A stretch of DNA of 64,000 nucleotides from Raja brachyura. Its lineage: Eukaryota. The notes under the pieces were generated by a model. That model had not been told where the DNA came from. It saw only the letters and a program-made list of their open reading frames with translations, and searched no databases. Every line of letters starts with the position of its first letter. Within the stretch, counting starts at the first letter, position 1. A program made the position numbers and the translations under genes. The DNA lies in assembly GCA_963514005.1 (NCBI GenBank), contig OY740781.1:179056001-179120000 (forward strand), given 5' to 3'. This document shows, piece after piece, positions 20,380 to 43,521 of the stretch.

Positions 20380-20443
20380 ATGAAGTACAGTGTTAGTGTT
20401 ACACTCCTGCTGCTGCTTGGAATTTGTGCAGCTTTGTCCATGG
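20380..20443 (+). CDS. CXC chemokine exon 1 (signal peptide, 64 nt)
   Basis: ATG at 20380, hydrophobic LLLLLGICAAL, phase-1 donor G|gtgagg at 20444. Confidence 0.92.
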
Positions 20444-22483
20444 GTGAGGAAAATACCCTAGATCTTGTCAATTATAGTCTTTAAGCTTTATAGTTGTAAT
20501 TAGATTTTTGATTAATTCAGCCAGTTGAATGAACTATTGAAGACAGTTCGCCGAATGTTTACTTGGATAATATTAGATATGGATTGTCTTATAATAAATG
20601 GTTGAAGCGGGTGGGTTGGTACTCATAGTAACTTAAAAAGTGAGCGGTGATCACACTGCAACATAGAATCCAGAGGGGTTTGGCAGATTCTGATTCAAAG
20701 ACACTGTATGTTTTCCAGGTTGTTCTATTTGATGTTCAGTCTTGCAGGTTACCATGTGTCCAGATGGAACTTGATGTGTCCTTCCATAGTCTTAGAATAG
20801 GCCTTGTTATAACAGTGCAGAAGGCCAAAGAAGAGGCCACATTGTGAACACTGAAAGTAATTAAACTAATTTTAAGGAATATATTTTTACAACATGCCAT
20901 TTGTTTTACAGCGGCTCATATAAATAACAATGAAGGAGCACGATGTAGGTGCAACACATTTGGAAAAAAATCCATGACGAAGGATAATATTCATAGAATT
21001 GAAATCTTCACACCGAACAGAAATTGCAAATACACGGAAATCATGTAAGAATTGTTCGTGCATTTAAATTTTCATGTTTATATTTCAATGGGAGGGATTT
21101 ATGATAATGTGGAGAAATTGTATGAATTACATTTTTATCTGCAGATCATCTGCCACAAGTGAAAGGAACAAACAAGAGAACTCTGACAAACATTTTTTAA
21201 TTAAATTATGTTGCAATTTATCCCCCAACCCCCCCACCCCCTCCAAAAAATCTAATAACTAGAAAGATTAAATATCTCCGTTTTTCTTTCAGAGCTTATC
21301 AGATATCACCACGCAAGGAAGTTTGTTTGAGTGGGAAGACTCCCTGGGTGAAGAAGCTTATTACTGACTTACTTAACGAAACTGAAAAGTAGGATACATT
21401 TTGAAGGGCTTCATTGCCACAATGGTATCCTGAGCTGATGAAACAGGTTTTATACCTACAAACGTTTTTTTATGGTGAAGTGATTTTAATTCTAAATAAA
21501 AAGGATTGTATTTCTGATATGATTTAAGCATCAAATAAATGGCATTCTAAAATGTATTTGTCTGGCCTAAACATAATTCCAAATCTTCTATCTCTTCCCT
21601 ATGAGGGAAAGCCTCCAATATTAAATCATAGAATGAGGTTCACAGCAGATAATTCAGCCCAAATGTCTTTGCTGGTTATGTAAAAGTGATATTCATGTAC
21701 TCTCACCTATTGCTCTTCAACTCTCAACCACCACCAAACCTCCGCCACTATTTCAGGTATTTTCAAAGCCTTGCAAATATCTCTGCTTTGAAAGTTCTTC
21801 CATCTAACTCTTTAATGAAAGTTACCATTAAATCTGCTTTCATTGCCTTTTCAGAGAGAAACTCCAGATTAACAGCTCTTTTCCTTGTGTTTCTTCTGCA
21901 AATGTATCCATATACGTGCCCTCTAGTCAATGATGCTTTTGCTACGAGCAACACTTTCATCTTAGTGTCTCCATTTTATATTTCATGATATACTGGATAT
22001 TGGATATACAGTATGCTTCAAATCTCACCTTCACTCCACGTATGTCCTGTTAAATAATCCAAGCTTCTCCATTTTCTCAATAAAATAGAGATTACAAAAA
22101 CATGGCTTCATTCTTGTAAATCAGATTTGTTGGACTTTGATTTTGGATGTAATTTGGTGCCATGAACTGGAAGGATTACATCAGCTAGAAACCTCTGAAA
22201 GGTTTATCATAGTTCCCTGCTATTTTTTAATTCTATGATGAGATGAACAAAGCGCAGAATCCCTGTTTCCTTTTTTTAATGGCCGTCATTGGCACATCAG
22301 GATGGAGGTGATTGAGCTTTCCTGATCTGATGACATTGTAAATCCAGGGGCACGGTACTATACCCGACTCCGCTTTTTCCAGACACATCTTTCCAGCCAC
22401 TGCTCGTTTCTTTTCAGGGTCTCTATTATTCTGTCATTCTCCTTTTCTCTGTCAGTAACACAAGGAACATTAAATTAGAGTAA
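20380..22483 (+). CDS. CXC chemokine gene (ELR-negative, CXCL8/CXCL13-like). join(20380-20443,20912-21044,21293-21388,22456-22483) = 106 aa, or a 3-exon form ending at TAG 21392 = 98 aa
   Basis: Spliced translation MKYSVSVTLLLLLGICAALSM-AAHINNNEGARCRCNTFGKKSMTKDNIHRIEIFTPNRNCKYTEII-AYQISPRKEVCLSGKTPWVKKLITDLLNETE(K* or NNTRNIKLE*). Signal peptide, C-X-C plus two further Cys, EII and CL..PWV motifs, GT-AG introns in phases 1,2,(2). Subtype cannot be assigned by eye. Confidence 0.93.
20912..21044 (+). CDS. CXC chemokine exon 2 (133 nt; CRC motif and third Cys)
   Basis: Acceptor ttgttttacag|, open frame ...EGARCRC...PNRNCKYTEI, phase-2 donor AT|gtaaga. Confidence 0.94.
21293..21392 (+). CDS. 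CXC chemokine exon 3 (fourth Cys and C-terminal helix)
   Basis: Acceptor tttttctttcag|, frame (I)AYQISPRKEVCLSGKTPWVKKLITDLLNETEK*. The TAG overlaps a possible donor AA|gtagga at 21389. Confidence 0.93.
22456..22483 (+). CDS. Putative CXC chemokine exon 4 (NNTRNIKLE*) followed by 3'UTR
   Basis: Strong polypyrimidine acceptor ttctccttttctctgtcag|, phase-2 compatible, short frame to TAA, AATAAA at 22630-22635. Confidence 0.6.
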
Positions 22484-25400
22484 CCAGAATAACGTGGATA
22501 AATGGTGTTTAGTTTAAGAGCATACTTCATATTATTTTAAGCTATAAGCAGCATTGCAAAGCAAGAAATGTGTCTGTCGAGAGCTTGCTATATTATATGT
22601 ATGAGAAATTATGTGCGCCAAGTTTTGTTAATAAACTGCTTTGAATCCAATAATTGAATCCTGTTCATCATTTTAAAGAGACACACGGAGAATGATACTG
22701 AACACCAAAGCTAAGTTAAGTCATTTAGATTTATAGAGGTAAAGAACACAGAAATGGGCTGAATGAGTCTGAAAATGGGTCTTGACCCGAAACATCACCT
22801 ATTCTTTTCTCCAGAATTGCTGCCTGACCCGAAGAGTTGCTCCAGCATTTTGTGTCTGTCTTCGACAGGAACGGGCAAATCAGCATACCATGTCCATGAT
22901 ATCCAGTACTCATCTATATCAATGCCATTTACTAGTACTTTGTCTGTAACCTTCTATGCATTGGCAATACAAGTGCTCATCCAGAAGCTTCTATAATGTT
23001 GTGAGAAACCTATCCACACCACCCACTGTGGTAAAAAGTGTTAAACATTTGTAACATCTTCTGCGTGACTACGTTTATCCTCAGCTTTGCTCTAACCACT
23101 TATCTCTTACTCCATCTTATCCCCTCCACAAGTCCAAGGCAGTGCAAGAAGTGGTCTTTATTCTGTTGCCGAGGTAGGATTAGAGTTGTTCAGGTCAGTT
23201 CAAGAATCTGACGATATAAGAGAGTAACTATTCCTGAATCTGGTGTTGCGGGACGTCAGGCTTCTGGACCACCTGCCTGACAGTAGCAGCAATAAGAGGG
23301 CATGGCCGAGATGGCCGGGATCCTTGATGTTAGGCAACACCGCATGCAGATGCGTTCAATGGAGGGGCGGGTTGTGCATGTCATGGACGGCAACTCGTCC
23401 TTGCGTTAGAATTGCCATACCAGGCCACGATGCGACCTGTCACAATACTTTCTGCAGTGTTTCTGTGGAATTGTGTTGGAGTATTTGGTGACATGCCAGA
23501 TCTCTTTAAACGTTGAAAAAAGTAGGGTTGTTGGCACTTCATGATTCCATCTACGTGCTGGGCCCAGGACACGTTATCTGAGATATTAACACCCAGGAAT
23601 TTGTGCAATGTCTTATAACTATCAGGATTCAATTCCATTTGAAATTCAATCTGATATGCTAGCACCAGCTATTCTGCTGCCTTTAACTCGATGATAATCC
23701 ATTGCCCAGCAAATATAACACACCTTGATCTGAAAGATCAAGACTAATCTTGTATATTCCCTGGATGAGATGTGCCAGTCTTCCAAGCCATTACAAGTCT
23801 TATTTTTAACAGATCCTTTTTACTATTAATAGGAACATATAGCACTGATGGAAAGTTGAGGACGAATGTGCCTCTGACAGCTTGGTGACAGAACTTATAA
23901 AGTAAAACAGTTATCTCGGTCTTTCCTTAAAATTAATTCATAACAGTGATCCGATCATGTATGATTTTGACTCATGGAAGCACAAGGAGGTCTTAAAGCC
24001 TCTTCATCCTTCTCCATTATTCAATAAGCATCCTGCACTCCAAGGAACAAAGTCCCAACCTCCTTACACCTCAGGCCCCTCAGTCCCAGCAACATCCTCA
24101 CTCATCTTCTCTGTACTCTCCCCCCAGCCCAATGACACCCCTGACCAAGACTGAACACAGCGCTCCAAATGTGGCCCCACCAACGTCCTGTACAACTGCA
24201 ACAGAACTTTCCAAACTCCACACTAAATACCCTGAACGCCAAGGGCCAATGTAGAACAAGCCCCCTCCATCATCCTACCCACCTATGACACAACCTCCAG
24301 GGAACCATGCACCAGCACCCCTACATCCCTTGCTCCACCACGGCCCCAGGGCCCACATACAACATGAAGGTCCCATCTCAACCCGACCTCCCAAAATCCC
24401 AAAACACCCCTCACCCACCGGCACCAAACGCCATCAGCTAGTCCTCAGCCCACTGGCCCAGCTGATCAAGATCCCACTGCAATCCTTTACAACCATCTTC
24501 ACTGTCCACAATACCACCTACTTTAGTGTCATCTGCAAACTGCACGCTAAAACTGTCAATAGTTTATCAAACATATTTTTATTTCGCAATAAATTATCTG
24601 CTGAAGGAACTCCCAGCATCTGTGGGATGAGGGGAGTAGTGATCGATGATTCTAACCAGTAGCGTCTAGGACCAGGGGTCATAGCCTCAGAATAAAATGA
24701 CGTTTCTTTAGGAAGTAGATAAGGAGGAATTTCTTTCGTCAGAGGGTGGTGAATCTGTGAAATTAATTGCCACAGAAGGCTGTGAAGGCCAGGTCAACGG
24801 ATTTTTTTAAGGCCGACATAGATAGATTCTTGATTAATATGCATGACAGGGGTTATGGGGAAAAGACAGGAGAATGGGGTTGAGGGGGAGAGATAGGTCA
24901 ATTATCGTAAACCTCCTCTGGACCCTCCCCAACACCAGCACATCTTTCTTCAGATATGCGGCCCAAAACTGCTCACAATAATCCAAAGGCAATAATCCAA
25001 ACTTGCCCTGCCTGCGACTTGTGTGTTCCCTCCTTCAGTCCTGCCTCCTACTGTAATGTCACTCCTTCAGTTACAGTATGTTGCCCCTCTTCACACTCAA
25101 ATATTTCTCTTCACACTTCTGCCCATGAGATTTCACTCACCATGAGTCTAACCATCCCAAACCAAGCTGTGATCTATCCTAATAAAATGTTTTCTTGTAA
25201 TCACAATTCCCTTTAAGTATTACTGAATGTTTTTTAAATGTGAGAATTCTGCTCAATATTATGTCCCTGCCCCCGTTCACCAATGATAGAGTACAAATTG
25301 TGGTGGTGACCCCATGAGTTAGCACTCAAACTGTTTTTGATTTCACAACACAATTAGAACAGGTTGTTGCACAACATTTCACAACCTGTATCCACGGGCC

Positions 25401-26009
25401 ATCCCTTCTCATGAGTTTACCTCCATCTTGAATATGGAATCTTAATAAGTTCTTAATTAGTGGTTGCAGCCCAGACCATCACAGAATTCAACATCTTTTC
25501 CATTGACTCCGTCTAAATTTCATCCTGCAATTAAGGACGAGTCTCACTCCAGATATTCCCTCTTCTCCCATCAGGGAAAGTGTACAGAAGTGTGAAAATG
25601 CATACTTCTAGATTCAGGGACAGTTTCTTCCCAGCTGTTATCAGGCAATTGAACCTTCCAATCACCAACTGGAGAGCTGCCCTGACCTATCATCAACCTC
25701 ATCGGAGAAACACAGACTATCTTTAGCCGGACTTTACCGGATTTTATCTTGCATTAAATGTTATTCCCTTTATCCTGTATTTGTACACTGTACACAGCTC
25801 GATTGTAATCATGTATTGTTTTTCCACAGACTGGATAGCGTGCAACAAAAAGCTTTTCACTGTACCTCAATACACATGACAATAAACTAAACTGAACTAA
25901 ATATTACTGTGCGGCATGGTGGTGCAGCAGTAGAGCTGCTGCCTCACACCAATTACAGTGTTGGAGACCAGGGTTTGATCTACGGGTGCTATCTGTATGG
26001 AGTTTGTAT

Positions 26010-27301
26010 TGAATTGAATTGAATTGAATTGAATTCCTTTATTGTCATTCAGACCTTTCGGTCTGAACGAAATTACGTGCCTGCAGTCATACATATATAA
26101 AAATAACAATACCGTACAATAAACACAAAATTAACATCCACCACAGTGAGTTCACCAAACCTCCTCACTGTGGTGGAAGGCAAAAGTCTTAGGGTCACTG
26201 TCTTTCTCCCCTCCTTATTCTCCCTCTGCGCTGAGGAGATCCAGGCCTCCGCCACCGCTGACGCCGGAACACCGCCACAGGCCCGCCGCTGGAACACCGC
26301 CACAGGGCCCGCTGCTGGAACACCGCCACAGGGCCCGCCGCTGGAACACCGCCACAGGGCCCGCCGCTGGAACACCGCCCCAGGGCCCGCCGCTGGAACA
26401 CCGCCACAGGGCCCGCCGCCGGAACGTCGCTGGAGCACCGCAGCTCCCGAGACCCAGGTCGCCGCTGAAGCACCACAGCTCCCGAATCCCAGGCCGCCGC
26501 TGGAGCACCGCAGCTCAGAGGGAACCAGGCCGCCGCTGGAGCACCGCAGCTCTCGAATCCCAGGCCGCCGCTGGAGCACCGCAGCTCTCGAATCCCAGGC
26601 CGCCGCTGGAGCACCGCAGCTCTCGAATCCCAGGCCGCCGCTGGAGCACCGCAGCTCAGAGGGAACCAGGCCGCCGCTGGAGCACCGCAGCTCCCGACAT
26701 CCAGGTCGCCGCTGGAGCACCGCAGCTCAGAGGGAACCAGGCCGCCGCTGGAGCACCACAGCTCCCGAATCCCAGGCCGCCGCTGGAGCACCGCAGCTCA
26801 GAGGGAACCAGGCCGCCGCTGGAGCACCGCAGCTCAGAGGGAACCAGGCCGCCGCTGGAGCACCGCAGCTCAGAGGGAACCAGGCCGCCGCCGGAGCACC
26901 GCAGCTCCCGAATCCCATGTCGCCGCTGGAGCACCGCAGCTCAGAGGGAACCAGGCCGCCGCTGGAGCACCGCAGCTCCAGAAGCCCAGGTCGCCGCCGG
27001 AAGCAGGTCGCCGCTGAAGCTCTGAAGGCCGCGCCGCCGCCGCTGGAAGCTGGAAGGCCGTCACCAGGGCCTCAGCACAGACGGAGACGGTGTCGGGGGA
27101 CACGACAGGTAAAGTCGCATCCCCCCGAAGGGAGAGACTAAAACCCCGTTTCTCCCACCCTCCCCCCCCCCACACACACACATACACAACCCAACAAACC
27201 AAAAATAAACACCAAAAACAGGGACGAGGACAAAAATAAAATAAAAGACAGACGGACTGCAGGCGAGCCGCAGCTGACAAGCAGCGCTGCCACTTCCGGA
27301 C
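26010..27301 (-). mobile_element. Non-autonomous bipartite retroposon with internal VNTR, inserted into a V-SINE
   Basis: (ttgaa)n tail at 26009-26035; 3' module shared with 29400-29600 and 39350-39540; GTAT repeated at 26006-26009 and 27302-27305; the interrupted SINE resumes at 27302. Confidence 0.8.
26260..27010. repeat. GC-rich compound minisatellite (about 26-bp units, then 35/36-bp units)
   Basis: ggcccgccgctggaacaccgccacag arrays, then ccaggccgccgctggagcaccgcagctc(agagggaa|tcgaatc) arrays. Confidence 0.95.
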
Positions 27302-28451
27302 GTATGTTCTCCCCGTGACCACATGGGCTTTCTCCAAGATCTTCAGTTTATTCCCACACTCCAAAGATGTACAGGTTTGTAGGTTAATTGGCTTGGTATA
27401 AATGTAAATTATCCCTAGTGTGTGGGATAGCATTAATGCGCGGGGATCACTGGTTGGTGCGGACTCGGTGGGCCGAAGGGCCTGTTTCCATGCTGTATCT
27501 CTAAACTAAACTAAACTAAAGTAAAGGGTATTTTACGTGGCTTTTGGATAGGCACATGGATACACAGGAAATGGGGGGATGCAGATTATGTACAGGCACC
27601 ATCCTAAATTCCAAAGGATACCCATGAATCGAGTGGTACATAAAGGCTAGCACTGCCAATGACACTCACGCAACATGCTTCAACAGGACAAATGTCTGAC
27701 AGGAAGTACACAGGACTCCATTTTATGAAAGCATCTTCTCAATGTGCATCCACAGACTGTGTGTGATGTTTGAGCAAGCAATCAATATACGGAACGGTCT
27801 GCAACGCTGACATGTCGATCCTACCAATGGATCTCAACAGTGGAACCAAAACAGCTCACACATCTCAGCCCAAATAGAAAATACATCAGATTTTCCCCAT
27901 CAATGCTACTTAGAGGGATAGCACAATCCATAGTGACGTACATGATTGTTTATTTAAATAACTGTTTTAGTTGCACTAAGGACTTGAGTGTTTTGTAGTT
28001 ATAAACTTATTTATTACATATTATCAATGTGTATTGTGTTTAAGGTCTGTTATGCTGCTACAGGTTGGTGCACAACATTTCACAACCTCTATTCATGGAT
28101 CATCCCTTCTCATGAGTTTATCTCCATCTTTAATATGTTTATTTGTGTTCCATTGTCAATTCTTGCATCAAAGCAGACTGTACATTGAATATTACTGTCC
28201 TCTCAGGAATTTGCAGTCTTTCAGTAATTATCAGCACTCGGCTCCTTAGTTCACTCAGCGCTACTATCTGGAAAACCCCCAAACTATTTGTGAGTTGGTC
28301 CTATATTATTCCACATAATTAAGTGGAGAAAGAGCATGAAATTAGCTGTAATCCCGGCCCCATTTACTTTGCATACAGTAGGCTGGTTGGTTACTCCTGG
28401 ATCCACACAGTTTGCTTCACTGGAGCAATATCTTAATCTGTTCTTCTATCA

Positions 28452-28785
28452 ATAGACAATAGACAATAGGTGCAGGAGTAGGCCATTTGGCCCTTCGAGC
28501 CAGCACCGCCATTCAATGTGATCATGGCTGATCAACCTAAATCAGTACCCCGTTCCTGCCTTCTCCCCACATCCCCTGACTCTGCTATTTTTAAGAGCCC
28601 TATCTAGCGCTCTCTTGAAAGCATCCAGAGAACCTGCCTCCACCGCCTTCTGAGGCAGAGAATTCCACATACTCACCACTCTTGGTGAGAAAAAGTGTTT
28701 CCTCGTCTCCGTTCTAAATGGCTTACTCCTTATTCGTAAACTGTGGCCCCTGGTTCTGGACTCCCCCAACATCGGTTTCCTGCCT
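28452..28785 (-). mobile_element. CR1 LINE 3' end
   Basis: SRTRGHSLRIR...WNSLP; aatagac tail; same subfamily as the 43.5 kb element. Confidence 0.85.
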
Positions 28786-28876
28786 CAATGTTTATATCTG
28801 CGTGCAATTAGTGCTCCACTTAATAAGTTCTTAATTAGTGGTCGCAGCCCAGACCTTCACACAATCCAACATCTGT

Positions 28877-29600
28877 CATTCCTTTCTTTTTGTCCTGTTA
28901 GGTGTATGTTTTAGGTTTTAGTTTTATTTTATTTTTAGCTGTGTAAATGTGGGGGGGGCGGGGGAAACTTTTTAATCTCTTCCCTGCACGGGGACTCAAC
29001 CTTTTCCCTGTATAGTCTCCGTTGTCGTTGGGGCTTAGCATCATGGAGCCGGCGGCCTCCAACCAGAATCGACCTGGGGCTCCAGTCGCAGAGCCTGCGG
29101 ACTCACCATCGCGGAGCTGGCCAACTCCTTCGGAGGTTCGGAGGCTCCGGCTGCAGGCCCTGTGGGCGATAACATCGGGAGCTCGCGGGTCCCTGGTGGG
29201 AGATCGCTTTTCAGAGCTCCCGCAACGGCAACTTCTCCCGCCCGAATCGAGGGATTTAAATCGACCCGGAGCGGGGCCTTACATCACCCGGCGCAGCTTA
29301 AACGGCAGCGAGACTTAACATCAAAAGCCGCGATCAGCTCGATGCCCGAGTTTGACCGCTTGATTACGGGAGAAGAAGAATAAAGAACAGGGAACAGGGA
29401 AGAGATAAGACTTTTGCCTTTCATCACATGAGGAGATGTTTGGAGATGCACTGTGATGGATGTTTGTGTGGAATTGTGTTAATTGTGTGTTTTGGTTTTT
29501 TGCTGTTATGACTGCAGGAACGTAATTTCGTTTGAATTGTGTATGTTTAAATGACAATAAATGGCATTCTATTCTATTCTATTCTATTCCATTCTATTCT
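28877..29600 (+). mobile_element. Non-autonomous GC-rich retroposon, same family as the 26.0 and 39.4 kb elements
   Basis: T-rich/G-run head, GC-rich body, gacttttgcctt...cactgtgatggatgtt...aatgacaataaa and an (attct)n tail. Confidence 0.75.
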
Positions 29601-30773
29601 TCCCACACTCCAAAGATGTACAGGTTTGCAGGTAAATTGGCTTGGTGTAAATGTAATTTGTCCCTAGTGTGTGTAGGATAGCATTAATGTGCGGGGATCG
29701 CTGGTCGGTGCAGACTCGGTGGGCAGAAGGACCTGTTTCCGCCCTGTATCACTAAACCAAACTAAAGTTAAGAATAATTTAAGTGTTGTTTGGATAGGCA
29801 CATGGATATACAGGAAGTGGGGGATATAGATCATGTACATGCAGAGGAGATTGGTTTAATTTGGCATCCGGTTTGGCGTAGACATTGTGGGCCTGTTCCA
29901 GCGTTGTACTTTTCTATGTTCCCTCATTGTATTTCACAGCAATAGTTTATCTTTGCCAATTTTGTCCGTCACACACTCTGAATTTTTCTCTATAACTTCC
30001 TCCATCTCGCCTCCTTTTAATTTTTCCTTAACATTCATCTGTTCAGCTAACTTTTCTAAGACCCTTCCTAAGGTTTATCTTATCATTGCTGTAATCGGAC
30101 TGTGCTCTTACGAAATACTTTGGCACACTTTTCTCTATTACAGACTCAAGCTATTATCGGAATATTTCTGCCATTTTCCTTAAATTTGGAAACTAATTGT
30201 TTTGCTTTTGAGGCAAGAAAAATGATAAAAATCTGCCTAAAAGTCCTGTAGCAAGATTCTCACATGGAATGTCTTCATTATATTAGTCAGCAATTAATTC
30301 TATCAGGATATGCAAAATGACAGGTGTATAGGTTTAAAGAACGGTTATTTCCTGTTTGTAACCACTGGAAATCTTATTCTAGATTACATTTAGACATACA
30401 GTTATTATGGTCAAACCTTCACACCTGCCATAAGTCAGAATGAACTTATTTCACACATTTCACTGTACCAATTGGTACATGGGACAAATAAATGTATCTT
30501 GAATAAAAGGACATAGGGTGACATAAATATAGTGAAGAGCAGCATAAAACTACAAAGCAGAAAACAGATGTGCGGGTAGTTCACTTCCCTGCGAGAAATA
30601 GCATAAATTCTGAGTTATCGAGGCACAAAATAACTCATCAACAAATGACTGAAAACGTCAAGTCTATTCAAAACTAACCTTTTGAATAAAGGCATTGTCT
30701 ACTGTAACTTAAAACTATCCCTAACCTTTTCCAAATCCCTCACCTAATGTGCAAGGTTTGTTGATCTGAGTTA

Positions 30774-33114: not shown

Positions 33115-34208
33115 ATTGTAGACATCTACTATAAACCCACTGACTCCCATGGCTATCTGGACTACACTTCCCACCCTGTTTCCTGAAAGGACTCCATCTG
33201 CACCCAGGATGAGGCGTTCCAAACCAGGGCATCGGATATGTACTCATTCTTTATGGAACGGGGGTTCCCCTCTTCTGCTATAGATGAGGCTCTCACCAGG
33301 GTCTCTTCTATACCCCGTAATTCTGTTCTCACTCCCCATCCCCCCACTCATAACAAGGGCAGAGGCCCCCTTGTCTTCACCTTCCACCCTACTAGCTGTC
33401 ACACGAACAAATAATCCTCCGACATTAACGCCACCTCCAACGGGATCCCACCACTGGTCCCATCTTCCCATCTCCTCCCCTTTCGGCTTTCCGCAGAGAC
33501 CGCTCCCTCCCTAACTCCCTGGTCAATTTGTCCCTTCCCACCCAAACCACCCCCTCTCCTGGCACTTTCTCTTGTAACCGCAGGAAATGCTACACTTGTT
33601 GCTTTACCTCCCCCCTTGACTCCATTCAAGGACCTAAGCAGTCTTTCCAGGTGCGGCAGAGGTTCACCTGCACCTCCTCCAATCTCATCTATTGCATCCG
33701 CTTCTCTAGGTGTCAGCTGCTCTACATCGGTGAGACCAAGCGTAGGCTTGGCAATTGCTTCGCCCAACACCTCCGCTCGGTTCGCAATAACCAACCTGAT
33801 TTCCCGGTGGCTCAGCACTTCAACTCCCCCTCCCATTCCGAATCCGACCTTTCTGTCCAAGGCCTCCTCCCTGGCCAGAGTGAGGCGCACTGTAAATTGG
33901 AGGAGCAGCACCTCATATTTCGCTTGGGTAGTTTACACCACAGCGGTATGAACATTGACTTCTCCAATTTTAGGTAGTCCCTACTTTCTCCTTCTTTCCC
34001 CTCCCCTCCCCAGCTCTCCCACAGCCCACTGTCTCCACTTCTTCCTTTCTTCTTCCCATCCCTCCACCCCAACATCGGTCTGAAGAAGGGTCTCGACCCG
34101 AAATGTCGCCTATTTCCTTCGCTGCATTGATGCTGCCTCGCCCACTGAGTTTCTCCAGCATTTTTGTCTACCTTCAATTTTCCAGCATCTGCAGTTCCTT
34201 CTAAAACA
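33115..34208 (+). mobile_element. Penelope-like element 3' portion with GIY-YIG endonuclease
   Basis: ORF 33528-33977 FTCTSSNLIYCIR.SRC.LLYIGETKRRL..FAQH; upstream DIYYKPTDSH remnant; downstream terminal unit with ctgaagaagggtctcgacccgaaa. Confidence 0.92.
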
Positions 34209-35927
34209 TATATAATTATTGGAATTACTATGGTCAGTCAAAGACTGTGTATTCTGTGACACTGATTGAAACTAACTTGCCCTGCCTTCCACCATCTACG
34301 TTATATAAGTCAGGGATTCATGCGTTACTTTCCGTTTGTCGGCACGAGTGCAGCTTCAACAACACAAGAACATTGGCATCACTGACTAAAGCCAGATTAA
34401 ATGCACCCCATTCATCCACCTAAAGGTTGCCCCCTGCTATAACACTCACAAAGGGGCGTCTGCTTCTTATTGAGTCCACACACAAGATTAGATGGTGTTC
34501 AGCCAGAGCTGAACACACTTCTCGGCATCTGCACACAATGGTGTCTGTCTTGTGCTTCTTGTACTTCTTGTGCATGGTGGTGGAAAGACTGGTGAAAACA
34601 GGGCCGTGACGTGAACGCTCTTTCCTTGACCCCACAAAGGGGTTAAATTATATAATACCTGCAAAATGCACATCAACAACTTGCCCTGACAGTTTCTATC
34701 TCCTGGCCTCCACACACTATTCTACTCCAGAAAGTGTAGGTTTATCTGCCCCCAGGATATATCAACCCCTTCCCTCCCAACCCAGAAGCAGACAATTCAA
34801 GGTAGACAAAAGTGCTGGAGAAACTCAGCGGGTGCAGCAGCATCTATGGAGCGAAAGAAATAGGCAACGTTTTGGGCCGAAACCCTTCTTCCGAAACATT
34901 GCCTATTTCCTTCGCTCCATAGACGCTGCCACACCCGCTGAGTTTCTCCAGCACTTTTGTCTACCTTTGATTTTCCAGCATCTGCAGTTGCTGCTTAAAC
35001 AGCAGAGAATTCAATCTTTCCTTGTGAACATTCCCCGCTGGCTGGAGAATTTCTCCTTGCATCGTGGCGTGACTCTTTAAAGGAAGTCAGAGGTGTAAGG
35101 ATATATGGCAGAAGCACGAGGTTTGGGTAATAACGCCTTGTCTGCATGAAGAAGCACAGCAGCATTTCATAAGGGAAATCATCCCATAGTTTTCATGCAT
35201 GCACCAATAAACGCACTCCTGTCAGAAATGTTTGAAGCCGTTTCACAGAGATCGCTAATATTGATTTAATACTGAAAAATATTGTTGCAAATTCATTTCT
35301 AAGCTATTATTTTTACCATTACTTTTCTTTTATTTAAAACCCAGTAAATGTCTTCAATAGATTTATTTTTAGTTTCCTCATATCCCTATTGTGAGGATTC
35401 AAGCAATATTTTTAACTACTCTGCGGTTTTCTGATTTGCATTTAAAAGGTCCCTTGGAGTGCTCCATATTTCTTCAGCCACTCGCTCAATATAACTGTTT
35501 AACCCTTTAGTTAGTCCTTATTAATACGTGTTTTTTTTGTTTTTTTTCAGCCCATATTACTGTCGCTATGCTTTACATCTCTCTTCATCTGTGGGTCTCT
35601 ACTGTTTCTTGCATTGTTTAGAGCCAAAACTGGATTTATTTTTACTAAGAAAAATCATTGCAAGCTATCCAGTTGTGGTTGGATGAATGCCTGAAGTTGC
35701 GTTTTTGATTTTTAAAACTCCCCAATCAAAGGCAGTAGATCCAGCATCTGGTTTCTGTCTGAAGCTACGTCTTAAAATGGAACCGAAAATAATATGAAGC
35801 TAATTAAAGACACAAATTCAAAAAACAGGCGAAATACTTTGGTCTTCCATTTTGTTTGAGCACTCTGATGAGACTAAGTGGAGAGCCACAAGACAAAAGG
35901 AAGATCCTAGAAGGTGAAGCTCCAGTT

Positions 35928-35991
35928 ATGAAGAACAAACAAATACTGAAGCCTTTTGCAGCAATTCTGCTTTTCACAATTGTTGCAGCAG
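35928..35991 (+). CDS. JCHAIN: JCHAIN exon 1 (signal peptide, 64 nt)
   Basis: MKN start as in the mammalian J chain, hydrophobic FAAILLFTIVAA, phase-1 donor G|gtgtgg (weak) that fits exon 2. Confidence 0.82.
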
Positions 35992-38900
35992 GTGTGGCGT
36001 TTAATGATTACATTTTTCATTGTGCAATGTGATAATGTGATGAGTAAATATTTCCTGTTTTCTTAGCAATAGAAACCTCAAAAGTACAAAAACAAAATAA
36101 TAATGAAGACATTTTCTTCCTAAATAATGAGAAACAACAACAATGAGTTGATTGTTTGTGGAGACATTGGTACAAGCATGTGCAGAAATCATCGATTAGA
36201 CTTGTTGTAAATTGATTTGTGGACAGTACTTCAGAGCGGCACCGTGGTGCAGCTGGTAGAGCTGCTGCCTCACAATACCAGAGACCCGGGTTCGATCCTG
36301 ACCTTGGGTGCTGTCTGTGTGGTGTTTGCACGTTCTTTCTGTGATCGCTCGGATTTCCTTTCGGTGTTCTGGTTTTCCCCCACATACCAAAGACGTGCGG
36401 GTTTGTAGGTTAATTCTTTGTCTCCATTTAGTTATTTAAGCAAAGTGTCATAACAGGTCCTAAAGCATTCCATATTGATATCCATACCCAAGCTGATAGG
36501 CCACTGCTATATTGGGCCTCCTTGAGGATTAATTAAGTCTTTTTGAAATAAATAAAACAAAAATAAACAAAAAAATGTAATGAAAATATTTAAAATTCAA
36601 GTAAAATGCAATTGTTGAATATAAATGTATAAATAAATGGTCAGATTCACAAAAAAAGCTTACAAATTTTAAAATCACGTATATAGCAAATTAAAAAATG
36701 AAGTTCTGTTTCTTAAAACTCTACTGTATTTAAGACTCCAAAATACGTTGTTTCATGATTTAATTCAAATTGTAAAATAGTTGATATAATTTTTCAGAGC
36801 GCTGCTATCACCACATTATTTTAGATGGGATAAACCAGATAACCACAAATCCGTCAGCTTAGATAATATAGAGCGGCACAGTGGCAGAGTCTCTTTGTTT
36901 GTGATGAATATTTATGGCATGTTGGTGTCACTGGGAAGCCCAGCACTCATGTCCATTTGGATATCATGTCCATTTCTGTGTCCATTTGGATATCATGTAA
37001 AATCTCCACATTCCTACTTGCTACATTGCTAGGTACCAATGTTGGTTGTGATGAGGATGCAGAGGCTTCAGGAAAACAGACCAGAACTGATTGTGGCAAC
37101 ATGTACATTTGTACGCTTTGGTAGAAAAAATTTAAAGCCAGTCTTTTTAAGTAATTAAAGATTGAACGATGTGATAGAGGAATCTGAGTGTCCATTGACA
37201 TGAATTATTAAAATATAGCATACAGGCGCAACAAGAAATGAGTTATGTTGGCTTTTATTGCAAGAGGATTAGAGTACAAAAATACAAATGGCTTAAAACA
37301 ATTATCTAGGCTTACTGAGGCTGTACATACCTGCCTAATTTGGGAAGGGTAGATTCACCAGAAAATGCAACAAAGGTTCACCAGCTGATTCCAATGAGAG
37401 AGGTTGTGTTGTACGAGGTTTGATTAAACAGATTGGGACCAGGCTCTCTTACATCAATCTCTTAGATTAACGAGAAAAAGAGGTGATCTCACTGAAATAT
37501 ATGAAATCTCTATGAGACTTGACAGGATAGATTTAGGGATTCTTTCCCTTGACTGGGGAGGCTAAAATCATTCAGGTATCAGATGACAAAAAAATCACCG
37601 CAAAGGTAATAAATGTTAGGAATTCTCTATCCAAGGAATTTGTGGAAGAGAGTCACAGAGAGCAAAAGATTTCTAGATATTACGGGAATGAGCTTGGTAC
37701 AAAAAAACAATGTTGAGGGGAAAGAACTGCAATGATCTTAACAAACAACAGAGGCACAAGGGTACGTAAGGCCGACTCCTGTTTATTTTTCCTATGTCCT
37801 TAACATTTTAATAAACATTTGCTTTTTCAGAGGATCTTTAAATGGTTTTACTCATGGGTCATATAGAGCAATTTACCATTTGTAACGAAGACTTGAATAA
37901 AGTTATTATTTTCTGAATAAATCAAGGTATATTATTTTGCACAGTGACACCTGCTATGTGGTAGATTGTTCTGATATCAGTAATAAATGTCACAAAAACT
38001 AATTTCTCATTAAACTACGCTGATGAGGTCTGGGCATTCAGGGATGGTGTTTACAATCATCTAGAATTTTGCTCATCAGATTTTCCTTTCCCATCGTCTA
38101 TTCTTGCCAGCCAGTGCCAACCCCAGCGCACCAATATCCTTTTATTAAAGACCATCGATCCTTTGTATTTTGCTCTTATTAACAATAGTTTTAGAACATG
38201 CAGTTGATGAGCATAACTGTCTTAACTGTATATAGACACCAAAGTGCTGGAGTAACTTAGTGGGTCAGGCAGCATCTCTGGAGAAAAAGGACGTGTGACT
38301 GTTCGGGTTGGGACCCTTCTTCAGACTGTTGTTTCAGTCTGAAGAAGGGTCCCGACCCGAAGCATCACCTATCCTATTTCTCCAGAAATGCTGCCTGACC
38401 CACTAAGTTACTCCAGCACTTTGTGTCTATCTTTGATATAAACCAATGCCTGCAGTTCTTTGTTTCTATATCTTGTCTTTACATTAATAGTTTTTTCTGT
38501 ACTTGCAAGCCAATGAACAGATACATTCAATTTGCACCTGGACATTGTAACTTCCACACTTATAATAAGTGCTACTGATTCAGAAAGTTAATAACCACAT
38601 CTATTTTCTTACAGCTGATGCTGAAAGCCACCTTCTAGTTAAATCACAATGTAAATGCATGACTGTCACATCCAAAACAGCTGTTTCTGTATTGCCTAAT
38701 AGTGGACGCGTGGAGCAGCTCATGAGAGATATACACATTGTGTAAGTAAATGCATTTTCATATGTGAATGTATCCACATGGTTGAAAACATGCAAAGTCT
38801 AATTATTGGAGACTGTGGGCAATTATGTGCTGTGGTTCATCGATTCGTTATCACAAAAAGGAGGTAATCAATACATCAGTCAGACTCAGACCATAACACA

Positions 38901-41900
38901 ACCCCTAACAACCATTCTGATTCCTTGCTTGAGTTATTTCCTGCTTGCTCTATATTCCCCGAAGGCCCTCTGCCTTATACAAATTTAGTACTTTTGCCCC
39001 GTTGTCCCGATATTTCCCTCTTCATTACTATCTTAAAACATATGGAGTTGTGATCACAGTTCCTAAAATGTTCTTCCACAGAAACACCATTGACCTGGCC
39101 AGGCTCATTTCACAATACAAGGTCCAGTATGGTCCCTCCACTAGTTGAACAATCCACAAATTGGTTCACGAAATTCTTTTGGATACACCTTACAAATTCT
39201 GCCCTGTCCTAATCTTTTGCACTAAGGAAATCCCAGTCAATATTGGGGAAGTTAAAGTCATTCATTATAACAACCCCATTCCTGTTGACACTTCCCATAG
39301 TCTGTCTACATATCTTTTCCTCTATCTCCTGTTGGCTATTGCGAGGGTTATAGTATAATTATACAATTATACAATACATTTATTTTCATTTGAACCTCAA
39401 GTATGAAGTTCAAATGAAATTTGGTTTCTGCAGTCATACAACAAGAAAAGAACCAAGACACACAACCAACACAATTTACACAAACATTCATCACAGTAAA
39501 TCTCCTCCTCACTGTGATGGAAGGCAAAGTCTTGTCTCTCCTCTGTGTTCCATTCTGCTCTCGATGTTAAAGTCCCGGCGGGCGATGGCAAGTCCCACGG
39601 CCATTAAGGCCGCACCGGGCGATGTAAGGCCCCGCTCCAGGTCTTAATGTTAATGTTGGAGCCACCGGTGGGCGATGGCAAGTCCCGCGGCCGTTAAAGC
39701 CGCGCCGGGCGATGTAATGCACCGCTCCGGGTCATTTTCAACCCCGCAACTCGGGCGGCAGAAGCTACCATTGCGGGAGCTCCGAGAATGGTTTCCCACC
39801 AGGGACCTGCGAGCTCCCGATGCCACCGTCCACCGGACCTGCGGCTGGAGCCTCCGTGCTCCGGAGTCGGGTCACAGCCGCGCGACACCACAGCTCTCCA
39901 TGCTCCGAAGCAGGCCAGCCCCACGATGGTAAGTCCGCAGGCTCCGCGACTGAAACCCCCAGGTCGTTCCGGTTGGAGGCCGCTCCACGGTGCTAGGCCC
40001 CAACGACAACTCGGTGAGGTTTGTTACTTAATGGGTACAATCATACAGCAGGATGCCCTTTTTTTCTATTGTTACAATAATTACTACTTGGCCATAGGCA
40101 ATAATCTTCCAATTATTATTTTAATTCATGCCTTTCTTCCTTTAATTACTGATATTGCCTACCCACATCAACAATCATGTGGTTGGACAGTCCGTGCTGT
40201 CAGCTGAAAGCTGTCCATGTGCAGAATGACTTAATGGTATTTCGCTGCCAATTTCTGGTAATGTTAAAATGGGTCTTAATTGTTCTTTTATTGCAGAGTT
40301 CCCACGAGGAGCAGAGAGAACATTTCAGATCCAACCTCCCCTCTTCGGAACAAGTTTGTCTACAAAATTTCAGATTTGTATGATTTATATTTTTATCTCT
40401 TTATTTGCAATATATAATTAGAGCAGGTGTTTATGAAAGAACTCCAGATGCTGGAAAAATCGAAAGTAGACAAAAATGCTGGAGAAACTCAGCGGGTGAG
40501 GCAGCATCTATGGAAAGAAGGAATAGGCGACGTTTCAGGTCGAGACCCTTCTAATTTGAGCAGGTTTCAGAACACAGCCCACACCTGGAATCTGGTATTC
40601 AAATTTTAATATGTGGTGTAATTCAGAACAACAAAAATAAAGAGGGAGAAGATTTGATTTTTTGCCTTCCATCAGAGTGAGTAATGTGGGGAATCCGCTG
40701 TGGTGGATGTTTATGTTAACTTCTATGTATTTGTGTGCCACGTTTTTTTTTCGTGTGGCCGTATGGTAATTCGCATACCACTTTGGTACACGTGACAATA
40801 AAAGGCCATTGAAACTTTTGTGCTACAATCAGGCCTCCTTGAGCCATTTCTGAATATTCAGTAACAACTGAATAACTCGGGTTGAATGGTGGTGTCATTA
40901 GTAGAGCTGTTGTCTTCTGCTCCTGTGAGCTTTGATCCAGACCTCGGGTGCTGTTTCATGGAGTTTGTACTATTTCTCTGTGACTATGTGGGATCCTGAA
41001 TATTTTGGTTTCCTCCACGTTTAGAAATCATGAAGGTTGGCAGGTTACCAGGCCATTCTCTATTACCGCTAATGTGTAGACGAGTGGTAGAATCTGAGGA
41101 AGCGTTAATAGTGACTGTGGGGAGAATAAAATGAATTAGTGTTAAATAATTAGGATGTGTGTAAAAATGGATGCTTGATGGTTGCTGCTGACCTGGTGAG
41201 CCAAAAAATCTATCTCCCTGCTGTTTTTCAATATGACTCCATAATTGTATGAATGCTTCAGTTGGACATTTTGGCAAAAAGGAGACCTAAAGGTATATTC
41301 AGAATTGCTTTGGTTTTTAATATTGCCAGAGGAACCATCTTCTCAGATAAGTGAATGGGTAAAATAGTCAAAACAACTGAGGAGATCAGCAGAAAAAGTC
41401 ACAAAATGCAGGAGTAACTCAGTGGGTCAGGCAGCATCTCTGGAGAACATGGATAAGTAATGTTTTGGGTCAGGAGCCTTCTGGCAGAACTTCTTGTCCC
41501 TACAAGGAAATTAGCAGAATGTTTTCATACCGAGGATGATTAAGATTTTTGATACATCATTATACATAATGTGAAAGAGCAATTTCAAATAACAATAGAA
41601 ACTATATTTAAAGAGGATTAATTTGCAGAGTTTGGGAGAAAAAGCTGGAAGTGGAAATGAACTTCACATTTATTTTGAGACACCACAAACATGGCCGTCT
41701 GAATGATTTCCAATGTTCCAAAGTTGTGCTCAATGGCATATTGACAATAGTGAAAGGACAACAAAATAAGTGGTGATATGTGGTTTAGATTAAAACCAGA
41801 ATTTTCCTAACAATTCATGTTCTCATGGCTCAGATATAACTGATGGAAGCTTGGTGGAAGTTTCCTTTAAATGCATAAGGGGATCTTTTATTTATTTGAT

Positions 41901-43216
41901 AAATAATTCCAAGACAATTCTTTGTCATGTTTTCATTCATTTTGCATTGGTTTGACCTATCGACTTCAGGTTAAATGATAGGGAACACCTATATTTACAC
42001 AGTTAAATCTTTTTATGGCTTTCTTCCAACGTAAGTATGACATGGGATATTGAGGCACTGGTAAGGAAAATGGACGCATATTTCAGGTATAGGCATCTGG
42101 GATCAAGTGAATCTCTTGAGGAGTATAAGAGATGTAGGACTATACAGAAGAAGGAAATCAGGAGGGCAAGAAGAGGAACTCCTGAATAGTAAGTTTGTGG
42201 ATTAAATCATTATTGGTGATGTAGTGGATAATGAAGACAGTTATCTAAGATTATAACAGGAGCTGGATGAATTGGAGGAGCGAGCCAAGTAATTGCAGAT
42301 GGAATTTAACTTTGACAAATGCCTAATGCAAGTTAAACCTGCGCATGATATACACAGTAAATGGTAGGACCCTGGAGAGTATTGTAGAATGCAGGGGCTT
42401 AGAGTTAAAGGTACATAGTTCCCTGAAAGTCGCAACACAGATAGAAAGGGGGGTGGGATGAAGAAGGTGTTTGGCACACTTCCCTTTATTGGTTAGGGGC
42501 TATTTCCATTCACTATGGAACTTTAGACGTCATGTTACAGTTCTAAAAGTCGTGGTGAGACCACACTTGGTGTTCTATGTGCAGTCCTGCTCACCAAGCT
42601 ACAGGAAAGATGTCATTAATCTGATAAGGGGAGAGAATAAATGTATGGGGATGTCACATGGATTGGAAGGTTTGAGTTACAAAGAGAGGCGAAATGGGCT
42701 GGGACTTTTACCCCTGGATTGTAGGAGGTAGTGTGGTGACCTTATAGAGGTATATGTGATCAGGAGGAGTGTGAAGTAAGTGGATGATCACAGCATTTTC
42801 CCAGGGGGGGGGCGGGGGGGGGGGGGGGGGTGAAGATTTAAAGGGATGGGAGGGATAATTTTTCTCCACGACGAGGGTGATGGGCTTAGAGATCAAGCTA
42901 CCAGAATGAGTTGCAGAGGTGGATATAGTTACAATGTTAAAAAACATTTGGACAGATAAGTGGATAGAAAAGGTTCAGAGGGATAGGGGAAACTGGGCTA
43001 GCTCAGTTTGACATGTTGGTTAGCATGAGGGAGTTGGGCTGAAGGGCATATTTCTGTGCGGCACAGCTCCACGACTGTGTTCATGAGAAATATATCTTTG
43101 ATCATTTATTTTGTTGCAGCTGCAAGAATTGCAACCAAAAGCCAACTTTACCTGGAGAACCCCAATGCAAACCCCCACCTCCCCCTGCAGACACCTGCTA
43201 CGGCCGTAACATCTAG
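35928..43216 (+). CDS. JCHAIN: Immunoglobulin J chain, join(35928-35991,38615-38741,40297-40377,43120-43216), 122 aa
   Basis: Spliced translation MKNKQILKPFAAILLFTIVAA-ADAESHLLVKSQCKCMTVTSKTAVSVLPNSGRVEQLMRDIHIV-VPTRSRENISDPTSPLRNKFVYKISDF-CKNCNQKPTLPGEPQCKPPPPPADTCYGRNI*. Carries the J-chain signature RENISDPTSPLR with the NIS sequon, plus CKC, CxxC and TCY. Four exons, intron phases 1,2,2. Confidence 0.97.
36235..36415 (+). mobile_element. HE1/V-SINE-like SINE in JCHAIN intron 1
   Basis: A box tggtgcagctgg, B box ggttcgatcc, V-domain-like core. Confidence 0.8.
37170..37800 (+). mobile_element. Old degenerate CR1 fragment in JCHAIN intron 1
   Basis: CR1-like nucleotide motifs such as ggcttttattgcaagaggattagagtacaaa and gaggtgatctcactgaaa. 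Confidence 0.6.
38233..38468. repeat. Head-to-head Penelope-derived terminal-repeat palindrome (others about 32400-32560, 34799-34967, 58330-58520)
   Basis: 38233-38328 is the near reverse complement of 38335-38429; the unit is homologous to the Penelope terminal sequence at 34076-34205. Confidence 0.85.
38615..38741 (+). CDS. JCHAIN: JCHAIN exon 2 (127 nt)
   Basis: Acceptor ctattttcttacag|; LLVKSQCKCMTVTS resembles mammalian VLVDNKCKCARITS; donor GT|gtaagt. Confidence 0.96.
39355..40012 (-). mobile_element. Non-autonomous GC-rich retroposon in JCHAIN intron 2
   Basis: The reverse complement of 39915-40010 matches 29021-29122; same 3' module with an atacaa-type tail. Confidence 0.75.
40297..40377 (+). 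CDS. JCHAIN: JCHAIN exon 3 (81 nt)
   Basis: Acceptor ttcttttattgcag|, VPTRSRENISDPTSPLRNKFVYKISD, donor TT|gtatga. Confidence 0.98.
42040..43075 (+). mobile_element. Old degenerate CR1 fragment in JCHAIN intron 3
   Basis: Degenerate CR1 RT/C-terminal residues (VRPHL..YVQ..SP.YRKD, LSYKER). Confidence 0.7.
43120..43216 (+). CDS. JCHAIN: JCHAIN exon 4, coding part
   Basis: Acceptor ttattttgttgcag|, (F)CKNC...PQC...DTCYGRNI, then TAG at 43214-43216. Confidence 0.9.
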
Positions 43217-43521
43217 AGAATGCCTATACCGTCAAAACACCATGGGAACCAAATGGATGGTGCGTGGAATCCCAAACGCCACTGGAATCCACAGCCTACA
43301 GCGCCCTCTACTGAAATATCACATGATCAGCCTCCATGTCAGATGTTGTTCAACCACATTGTGTTTTCTTAATGCATTTTTAGCTTTATATAGTTGTACT
43401 TGCTTTTTGTCTTCATTGAACATATAAAATGCTTCATTGCTTCAAAACTTGTTTTGTGAAAATCCCGTTCTTTGACGTAGCATAATTTCTAATTTGTCAT
43501 TTTACTTTTTTTTAATGACAA

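What the first reader, a model, noticed from the sequence alone, without database searches (positions are those of the whole stretch)
20380..43216. JCHAIN directly follows a CXC chemokine gene with matching exon architecture
Seen: both genes are on +, with no other gene found between them. Both have a 64-nt signal-peptide exon 1 (21 codons + G), a 127-133 nt exon 2 with C-X-C about 11-14 codons in and ending I-[IV] at phase 2, and intron phases 1,2,2 if chemokine exon 4 is used. Established: J chain has been proposed to be a co-opted CXC chemokine (Kawasaki, Ohta, Castro and Flajnik, PNAS 2024, cited from memory). Inference: this locus may preserve the ancestral tandem arrangement, making the neighbouring chemokine a candidate close relative of the gene that became J chain. 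The general idea is therefore not new; the value lies in this specific gene pair.
Basis: partly seen in the sequence, partly recalled or inferred. Interest (0 to 1): 0.85.

Follow-up and report, generated by a model that had tools for sequence, protein, structure and literature searches.

The report
Skate chemokine gene beside JCHAIN
A CXC chemokine gene really does sit 14.5 kb upstream of the immunoglobulin J chain gene on the same strand, with the same exon layout, in what is evidently a skate genome, but this arrangement in cartilaginous fishes was already published in 2024 and this pair adds little.

Summary
On the + strand there is a CXC chemokine gene with exons 20380-20443, 20912-21044 and 21293-21388. 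JCHAIN follows with exons 35928-35991, 38615-38741, 40297-40377 and 43120-43216.

- **Shared layout.** Both have a 64-nt signal-peptide exon and intron phases 1 and 2. Exon 2 is 133 nt in the chemokine and 127 nt in JCHAIN. It carries C-X-C at mature positions 12-14 and 13-15, and ends I-I and I-V.
- **Between the genes.** I found only retroelement debris and repeats.
- **JCHAIN model.** It is confirmed exon by exon against 122-aa skate J chains.
- **Chemokine model.** It rests on sequence and Pfam alone. No RNA run was available, and a fourth exon, hence the third phase-2 intron, is unproven. A three-exon, 98-aa reading is equally possible.

The interpretation adds little. Kawasaki et al. 2024 (PMC10801876) already report jchain downstream of the CXCL8-like cluster in cartilaginous fishes, with 1-2-2 introns. 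Exon-by-exon and profile comparisons show no detectable similarity between this chemokine and J chain, so "closest relative" has no support.

Skates carry several JCHAIN genes, and other first-stage notes of this scan place a second JCHAIN and chemokine locus about 706 kb away in this genome, so this pair is not uniquely ancestral.

Verdict: real, already known, low interest.

The parts
20298..20305 (+). TATA-like box (TATAAATA) about 75 nt upstream of the chemokine ATG
   Evidence: Read from the sequence. Function is not tested.
20380..20443 (+). Chemokine exon 1 coding part: 64 nt, signal peptide MKYSVSVTLLLLLGICAALSM plus G, phase-1 donor
   Evidence: donor tgg|GTGAGG.
20912..21044 (+). Chemokine exon 2: 133 nt, AAHINNNEGARCRCNTFGKKSMTKDNIHRIEIFTPNRNCKYTEI(I), with the CXC motif and the third Cys; phase-2 donor
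   Evidence: Pfam IL8 PF00048 profile positions 2-34 of 60, E = 0.0026. Weak PDB match to CXCL11. Atlas nearest cluster carries IL8.
21293..21388 (+). Chemokine exon 3: 96 nt, (I)AYQISPRKEVCLSGKTPWVKKLITDLLNETE.., with the fourth Cys and the WV motif. It is followed either by a phase-2 donor (GT at 21389-21390) or, if unspliced, by AAG then TAG (stop at 21390-21392)
   Evidence: Pfam IL8 positions 41-60 of 60, E = 0.0045. Best PDB matches are a C-C chemokine (CCL18, E = 0.07), then CXCL8 and GRO chimeras, CXCL5 and CXCL6.
21495..21539 (+). Two AATAAA signals (21495 and 21534), 100-145 nt after the read-through stop. They fit a three-exon transcript.
   Evidence: No transcript data.
24124..28453 (.). 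Intergenic repeat block, third copy of a roughly 4-kb unit. It includes a GC-rich tandem array at about 26010-27301.
   Evidence: Self-BLAST shows 92-96% identity to 1-4011 and 8766-13156. Repeated ORFs.
35928..35991 (+). JCHAIN exon 1 coding part: 64 nt, MKNKQILKPFAAILLFTIVAA plus G, phase-1 donor
   Evidence: Scan for ATG plus 64 nt plus GT. tblastn of skate J chains matches residues 1-21 here.
38615..38741 (+). JCHAIN exon 2: 127 nt, ADAESHLLVKSQCKCMTVTSKTAVSVLPNSGRVEQLMRDIHI(V); phase-2 donor
   Evidence: Pfam Ig_J_chain positions 2-37. 39 of 43 residues identical to A. radiata J chain.
40297..40377 (+). JCHAIN exon 3: 81 nt, VPTRSRENISDPTSPLRNKFVYKISD(F); phase-2 donor
   Evidence: Pfam PF15097 38.3 bits, E = 1.5e-9. 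PDB J chains, E = 5e-8. 26 of 26 identical to A. radiata.
43120..43216 (+). JCHAIN exon 4 coding part: CKNCNQKPTLPGEPQCKPPPPPADTCYGRNI plus TAG. This is the short skate-type C-terminus, giving a 122-aa precursor.
   Evidence: 30 of 31 identical to A. radiata. All skate J chains end at the same place.
43217..43345 (+). Untranslated relic of the longer ancestral J chain C-terminus, scattered over three reading frames
   Evidence: Local alignments to ray and shark J chain tails against shuffles.

Best explanation
This is the cartilaginous-fish form of the CXCL and JCHAIN linkage, in a skate (family Rajidae). A CXCL8-group-like, non-ELR CXC chemokine gene is followed 14.5 kb downstream, on the same strand, by a functional-looking JCHAIN gene.

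The chemokine should be secreted after removal of the signal peptide encoded by exon 1. It should fold on two disulfides, Cys12 to Cys39 and Cys14 to Cys56, and signal through a CXCR-type receptor. This is inferred from family membership.

JCHAIN encodes the 122-aa skate J chain. It keeps the CKC and CKNC cysteines used in other vertebrates to bond IgM heavy chains. It lacks the C-terminal hairpin of tetrapod J chain.

The shared architecture is the footprint of JCHAIN's origin by tandem duplication of a CXCL gene in the jawed-vertebrate ancestor, as already published. That architecture is a 64-nt leader exon, the signal/mature boundary at intron 1, CXC early in exon 2, and phases 1 and 2. The spacer is filled with retroelements. 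This locus is one of several JCHAIN copies in skates, not a uniquely preserved founder pair.
For: - Gene models.
- Pfam: IL8 on chemokine exons 2 and 3, at adjacent parts of the profile; Ig_J_chain on JCHAIN exons 2 and 3.
- PDB: J chain matches at E = 5e-8.
- Exon-by-exon tblastn identity of 79-100% to RefSeq J chains of A. radiata, L. erinacea and R. longicauda and to R. eglanteria AAN62851, all 122 aa.
- No paralogue and no ncRNA in the spacer, which is repeat-rich.
- Net charge is positive in every coding piece of both genes, matching the paper's point that cartilaginous-fish J chains are basic.
- Published arrangement and phase data: PMC10801876.
- Several JCHAIN genes per skate genome and a diverged second chemokine exon 3 in the source organism's DNA.
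Against: - There is no transcript evidence for the chemokine. All runs found were DNA contigs.
- No annotated orthologue was found in two word-based protein searches, so expression and the 3' end are unknown.
- Each chemokine exon alone scores below Pfam's whole-protein cut-off (18.4 and 17.6 bits against 21.3).
- The ELR motif is absent (E-G-A-R), so assignment to the CXCL8-like group rests on the WV motif, a Glu and weak PDB matches.
It rests on the paper.
Confidence: 0.88

Rival explanations
1. Stronger reading by the first reader: this neighbouring chemokine is the closest surviving relative, in effect the parent lineage, of JCHAIN. The pair would be the preserved ancestral tandem.
For: Same strand, adjacent position, identical 64-nt leader exon, and CXC offset by one residue. 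Both second exons end at phase 2 after Ile.
Against: - These features are shared by most CXCL genes (PMC10801876), so they do not single out this gene.
- There is no sequence or profile similarity.
- The listed between-species differences in exon 2 are five amino-acid-changing substitutions against one synonymous, which suggests fast turnover.
- Skates have multiple JCHAIN copies, and at least one more chemokine copy exists.
Confidence: 0.08
2. The chemokine is a three-exon gene or a decaying copy. Transcription would run through the putative third donor, stop at TAG 21390-21392 and end at the AATAAA signals at 21495 or 21534. Only phases 1 and 2 would then be shared with JCHAIN.
For: - The read-through product is 98 aa, a normal chemokine precursor length.
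- The stop overlaps the weak donor AAAA|GTAGGA.
- Two polyadenylation signals lie 100-145 nt downstream.
- Candidate fourth exons give implausible or arbitrary tails.
- No annotated orthologue was found.
Against: [quoted passage not shown] The donor lies at the expected phase-2 position. The ORF, all four cysteines and the used splice sites are intact.
Confidence: 0.35
3. The adjacency is a lineage-specific rearrangement or a misassembly.
For: The region is repeat-rich, with three blocks 92-96% identical in the window. That kind of sequence can mislead assemblers.
Against: - The published arrangement in nine cartilaginous fishes has jchain downstream of cxcl genes.
- There are no N runs in the window.
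- DNA contigs of four runs tile 20.2-23.3 kb without structural breaks outside the SINE at 22766-22865.
- A second locus with the same pairing is noted in this genome (unchecked).
Confidence: 0.04

Closest known systems
Chondrichthyan cxcl cluster A and jchain arrangement (Kawasaki, Ohta, Castro, Flajnik, PNAS 2024; PMC10801876)
   Same: jchain lies downstream of, and in the same orientation as, CXCL8-like cxcl genes. Genes have four exons, phases 1-2-2, the signal/mature boundary at intron 1 and CXC in exon 2. J chain is basic.
   Different: Nothing of substance. This is one more instance, in a skate whose J chain matches none of the database entries exactly. Which species are in the paper's Dataset S1 could not be read.
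Skate J chains (Amblyraja radiata XP_032873082, XP_032873212 and XP_032873228; Leucoraja erinacea XP_055502907; Rhinoraja longicauda XP_078268268 and XP_078262610; Raja eglanteria AAN62851)
   Same: 122 aa, the same four coding pieces and the same stop after ..CYGR(N/S/D)I. Identity is 79-100% per exon.
   Different: None is identical to this window's gene. Differences are a few residues in the leader and in exon 2.
Human CXCL8 (interleukin-8) and the ELR+ CXCL1-7 group
   Same: Four-Cys CXC pattern with 24 residues between Cys2 and Cys3 and 16 between Cys3 and Cys4, one more than I recall for CXCL8. Also T-E-I-I after the third Cys, a WV motif at the start of the C-terminal helix, a 64-nt leader exon and a 133-nt exon 2 (136 nt in CXCL8, from my own knowledge). 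Exon 3 matches CXCL8, CXCL5 and CXCL6 among its top PDB hits, behind CCL18.
   Different: No ELR (E-G-A-R-C-R-C). All matches are weak (E of 0.07 or worse). Exon 2 matches CXCL11 slightly better. The fourth exon is unverified.
Tetrapod J chain (for example human, PDB 6KXS chain J)
   Same: Exon 3 peptide RENISDPTSPLR..FVY..SD is almost invariant. CXC lies at residues 13-15, and there is a CKxC pair.
   Different: The skate protein stops just after the Cys that aligns with human Cys101. It therefore lacks the last disulfide hairpin. It is basic rather than acidic.

Membership tests
CXC chemokine (Pfam IL8, PF00048) | Profile match to the chemokine domain | tested here: met
Exons 2 and 3 hit consecutive parts of PF00048 (positions 2-34 and 41-60 of 60), with E = 0.0026 and 0.0045. 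Each half is under the 21.3-bit whole-protein cut-off, but the rough sum is 36 bits.
CXC chemokine (Pfam IL8, PF00048) | C-X-C near the mature N-terminus plus two further Cys at canonical spacing | tested here: met
   C12-R-C14, C39 and C56 of the mature chain.
CXC chemokine (Pfam IL8, PF00048) | Cleavable signal peptide on its own exon, phase-1 intron at the signal/mature boundary | tested here: met
   A 21-codon hydrophobic leader plus G, then GT. The cleavage site itself was not predicted with a dedicated tool.
CXC chemokine (Pfam IL8, PF00048) | Four exons with intron phases 1-2-2 | tested here: inconclusive
   Phases 1 and 2 are shown. The third intron is only a possible donor overlapping a stop codon. 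There is no transcript evidence.
CXC chemokine (Pfam IL8, PF00048) | Expression, secretion and receptor-mediated chemotaxis | not testable with these tools
   No RNA run was served. No annotated orthologue was found.
CXCL8-like gene of cluster A (criteria quoted in PMC10801876: ELR motif, a Glu residue, WV motif) | ELR immediately before CXC | tested here: not met
   The sequence is N-E-G-A-R-C-R-C. Glu and Arg are present but separated by two residues.
CXCL8-like gene of cluster A (criteria quoted in PMC10801876: ELR motif, a Glu residue, WV motif) | Conserved Glu at a specific position | tested here: inconclusive
   T-E-I-I follows the third Cys, as in human CXCL8 (my recollection of that sequence). 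The paper's exact position could not be read because its datasets are not held.
CXCL8-like gene of cluster A (criteria quoted in PMC10801876: ELR motif, a Glu residue, WV motif) | WV motif | tested here: met
   ..GKTPWVKKLI.. in exon 3.
Immunoglobulin J chain (Pfam PF15097) | Profile match | tested here: met
   Exon 3 alone scores 38.3 bits against a cut-off of 27 (E = 1.5e-9). Exon 2 hits positions 2-37. PDB J chains match at E = 5e-8.
Immunoglobulin J chain (Pfam PF15097) | Orthology to known skate J chains over the full length | tested here: met
   All four coding pieces align to 122-aa skate J chains with the same boundaries and the same stop.
Immunoglobulin J chain (Pfam PF15097) | Cysteines that bond the Ig heavy-chain tails (Cys15 and Cys69 of the human numbering) | tested here: met
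   C-K-C in exon 2 and C-K-N-C at the start of exon 4 align with those positions. The function itself was not tested.
Immunoglobulin J chain (Pfam PF15097) | Four exons, phases 1-2-2 | tested here: met
   64, 127 and 81 nt then the last exon, with GT..AG at all three introns.
Conserved CXCL-then-JCHAIN tandem of cartilaginous fishes | JCHAIN downstream of a cxcl gene, same orientation, no gene between | tested here: met
Conserved CXCL-then-JCHAIN tandem of cartilaginous fishes | Same order in other sharks, rays and chimaeras | not testable with these tools
This rests on PMC10801876.

The most novel reading that the evidence does not exclude
In skates the chemokine and JCHAIN are copied together as one unit. 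There would be at least two such loci about 706 kb apart on this chromosome, and two or three JCHAIN genes in other skates. The chemokine partner would be an unannotated, fast-evolving CXCL8-group gene. The paired copies would then give independent replicates to ask whether the two genes share regulation or are kept together by selection.
Probability: 0.3. Interest if true: 0.35.

Novelty: already known. Interest (0 to 1): 0.18.

Why it matters
The link between J chain and CXC chemokines answers a 50-year-old question about where J chain came from, but that answer was published in 2024 with the cartilaginous-fish gene order included. This window confirms it independently in one more skate.

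It adds three small points:
- The chemokine next to JCHAIN appears to be unannotated. It shows mostly amino-acid-changing differences between related skates.
- That chemokine has no residual sequence similarity to J chain.
- The locus is one of several JCHAIN copies in skates, so it should not be treated as the founder pair.

Tried and rejected
- **Transcript support.** The look-up of sequencing runs returned no run on record as RNA. Read laying on 20200-23300 gave only DNA contigs running through the introns and no splice joints. The splice junctions therefore stay unconfirmed for the chemokine.
- **Chemokine orthologues.** Two word-based searches, on exon 2 and exon 3, found no candidate.
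- **ESM Atlas.** Chemokine exon 2 points weakly to an IL8-bearing cluster (score 0.79). JCHAIN exon 2 points to nothing.
- **Hidden similarity between the two genes.** None was found by BLOSUM global alignment against shuffles, nucleotide alignment, hhalign or cross-family Pfam. The only nucleotide match is a 23-nt AT-rich stretch, 21118-21140 against 40376-40398, which I take as chance.
- **Fossil copies in the spacer.** None of either gene was found.
- **Out-of-frame J chain tail against Pfam.** No hit. It became visible only against ray and shark J chains.
- **The paper's datasets.** They are not held.
- **Left out by the operators' rule.** I did not search, fold or build a tree with a joined (spliced) protein model of either gene. 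All searches were made exon by exon, by reference.
Full report
**What is there.** The window has no N runs and is repeat-rich vertebrate DNA. On the + strand I read two small secreted-protein genes.

The chemokine gene:
- It starts at ATG 20380, 75 nt after a TATAAATA box (20298-20305).
- Exon 1 (20380-20443) is 64 nt, that is 21 codons of a hydrophobic leader plus one G. It ends at tgg|GTGAGG.
- Exon 2 (20912-21044, 133 nt) follows a pyrimidine-rich acceptor. It encodes AAHINNNEGARCRCNTFGKKSMTKDNIHRIEIFTPNRNCKYTEI and ends two bases into an Ile codon.
- Exon 3 (21293-21388, 96 nt) encodes AYQISPRKEVCLSGKTPWVKKLITDLLNETE.

JCHAIN:
- Exon 1 is 35928-35991 (64 nt, MKNKQILKPFAAILLFTIVAA plus G).
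- Exon 2 is 38615-38741 (127 nt, with C-K-C, ending H-I then two bases of a Val codon).
- Exon 3 is 40297-40377 (81 nt).
- Exon 4 runs from 43120 to the stop at 43214-43216.

**Identity of the genes.**
- Pfam places chemokine exons 2 and 3 on adjacent parts of the IL8 (chemokine) profile, positions 2-34 and 41-60 of 60, with E = 0.003 and 0.005.
- Pfam places JCHAIN exons 2 and 3 on Ig_J_chain, positions 2-37 and 41-66. Exon 3 scores 38 bits, E = 1.5e-9.
- JCHAIN exon 3 matches solved J chains at E = 5e-8.
- A whole-library HMMER search with JCHAIN exon 3 returned a basking-shark J chain. Using that as a query gave 14 cartilaginous-fish J chains.
- The skate J chains (Amblyraja radiata, Leucoraja erinacea, Rhinoraja longicauda, Raja eglanteria) are all 122 aa. 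They align to the four coding pieces with exactly the boundaries I had read, at 79-100% identity per exon, and end at the same stop.
- None is identical to this window's gene, so the window comes from another skate or another gene copy.
- The JCHAIN model is thus well supported by annotated and deposited sequences.

**How far the chemokine can be classified.**
- It has the four canonical cysteines, T-E-I-I after the third Cys and a WV motif. Instead of ELR it has E-G-A-R.
- PDB matches are weak. Exon 2 is nearest CXCL11. Exon 3 is nearest the C-C chemokine CCL18, then CXCL8, CXCL5 and CXCL6.
- I call it a CXCL8-group-like, non-ELR CXC chemokine. I do not file it as a strict CXCL8-like gene by the paper's three criteria, because one of them (ELR) is not met.

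**What is not shown.**
- No RNA run was available.
- The four runs laid on 20200-23300 were all DNA contigs and showed no splice joints.
- The third chemokine intron is only a possibility. The candidate donor (GT at 21389-21390) overlaps an in-frame stop (TAG 21390-21392).
- Reading through gives a normal 98-aa precursor, with AATAAA signals 100-145 nt downstream.
- Candidate fourth exons give arbitrary tails.
- The '1-2-2' match is therefore proven only as '1-2' for this gene.
- Two protein searches found no annotated orthologue, so the gene may be unannotated in skates.

**Between and around the genes.**
- tblastn and sensitive blastn find no further copy or fossil of either gene in the window.
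- There are no Rfam families or tRNAs.
- 42% of the spacer is repeated within the window alone.
- It includes the third copy of a roughly 4-kb block, at 92-96% identity, with a GC-rich tandem array.
- None of the spacer ORFs I tested matched a Pfam family. I read the rest as repeat-derived (SINE and Penelope-like, by eye). Reverse-transcriptase matches came only from the window's flanks.
- I accept 'no other gene between' as far as these tools can see.

**Does this pair say anything new about J chain's origin?** I tested the one claim that goes beyond the literature, that this neighbour is a candidate close relative of the gene that became J chain.
- Global alignments of the matching exons score no better than shuffles (p = 0.39, 0.15 and 0.08). 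Nucleotide alignments do no better.
- hhalign of a 14-species J chain profile against chemokine exons 2 and 3 gives probabilities of 0.2% and 0.1%.
- Neither gene's exons touch the other's Pfam family at E up to 10.
- The shared features are those that the paper reports for most CXCL genes, so they do not single out this gene.
- Of the listed exon 2 differences in related skates' DNA, five change the amino acid and one is synonymous. This points to fast turnover or mixing with paralogues.

**Prior knowledge.** Kawasaki et al. 2024 (PMC10801876) report the following.
- Four exons, phases 1-2-2, the signal/mature boundary at intron 1 and CXC in exon 2.
- In whale shark, six other sharks and rays, and elephant shark, one or more jchain genes lie downstream of cxcl genes and cluster with CXCL8-like genes.
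- They also compared caecilians, coelacanth, bichir and lamprey.

**Not a unique relic.**
- A. radiata has three distinct 122-aa J chain proteins on one chromosome-size (193-Mb) sequence, and R. longicauda has two.
- The source organism's DNA contigs include a second version of the chemokine exon 3 region, with 20 differences and an in-frame 3-nt deletion.
- Other first-stage notes of this scan, which I could not check, place a second JCHAIN and CXC chemokine locus about 706 kb upstream in the same genome. The scan has therefore noted the same kind of pairing on other DNA of this genome.

**Verdict.** Interest is low.

Everything was done exon by exon, by reference.

Noticed in passing
window 43193-43345: The skate J chain stops at TAG 43214-43216, but relics of the longer ray and shark C-terminus follow it in three different frames. 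These are RECLYRQNTMG, GNQMDGAWNPK..RHWNPQPTAPSTEISHD (the coding frame) and SASMSD. All skate J chains in the database end at the same place, so the truncation is an old lineage trait with later decay, not an assembly error.
   Followed up: partly
window 1-4011, 8766-13156, 24124-28453: Three collinear copies of a roughly 4-kb block, 92-96% identical. The third is interrupted by a GC-rich tandem array at about 26010-27301. Whether this is a segmental triplication or a composite transposable element was not resolved.
   Followed up: partly
window 21239-21417 (reads): DNA contigs of the probable source organism hold both an identical copy and a second copy of the chemokine exon 3 region. The second copy has 20 differences and an in-frame 3-nt deletion. 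This indicates a paralogous chemokine elsewhere in the genome.
   Followed up: no
window 20992-21019: In related skates' DNA, five of the six listed differences in chemokine exon 2 change the amino acid (H>Y, R>K, P>A, N>T, R>G), all within IHRIEIFTPNRN. The flanking intron is far less diverged. This suggests positive selection or paralogue mixing.
   Followed up: partly
alignment A1 (P0001, P0007-P0010, P0012): J chains of galeomorph sharks (whale, basking, cat, epaulette and hound sharks) read K-C-K-L-L. They lack the second Cys of the C-X-C motif that rays, skates, sawshark and sevengill shark keep.
   Followed up: no
window 4600-8000, 13700-15400, 49300-54000, 59100-59550, 60385-61100: The flanks of the locus are filled with retroelements. 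Reverse-transcriptase ORFs are confirmed by Pfam at 6548-7375, 14444-15406, 51190-51819 and 60385-61104. There is also a probable transposase remnant near 59.2 kb.
   Followed up: partly
window 20243-20275: About 30-50 nt upstream of the chemokine TATA box lies TTGCAAAT. As I recall, this resembles the C/EBP (NF-IL6) site of the human CXCL8 promoter. No NF-kB-like site was seen beside it. This is from memory and untested.
   Followed up: no
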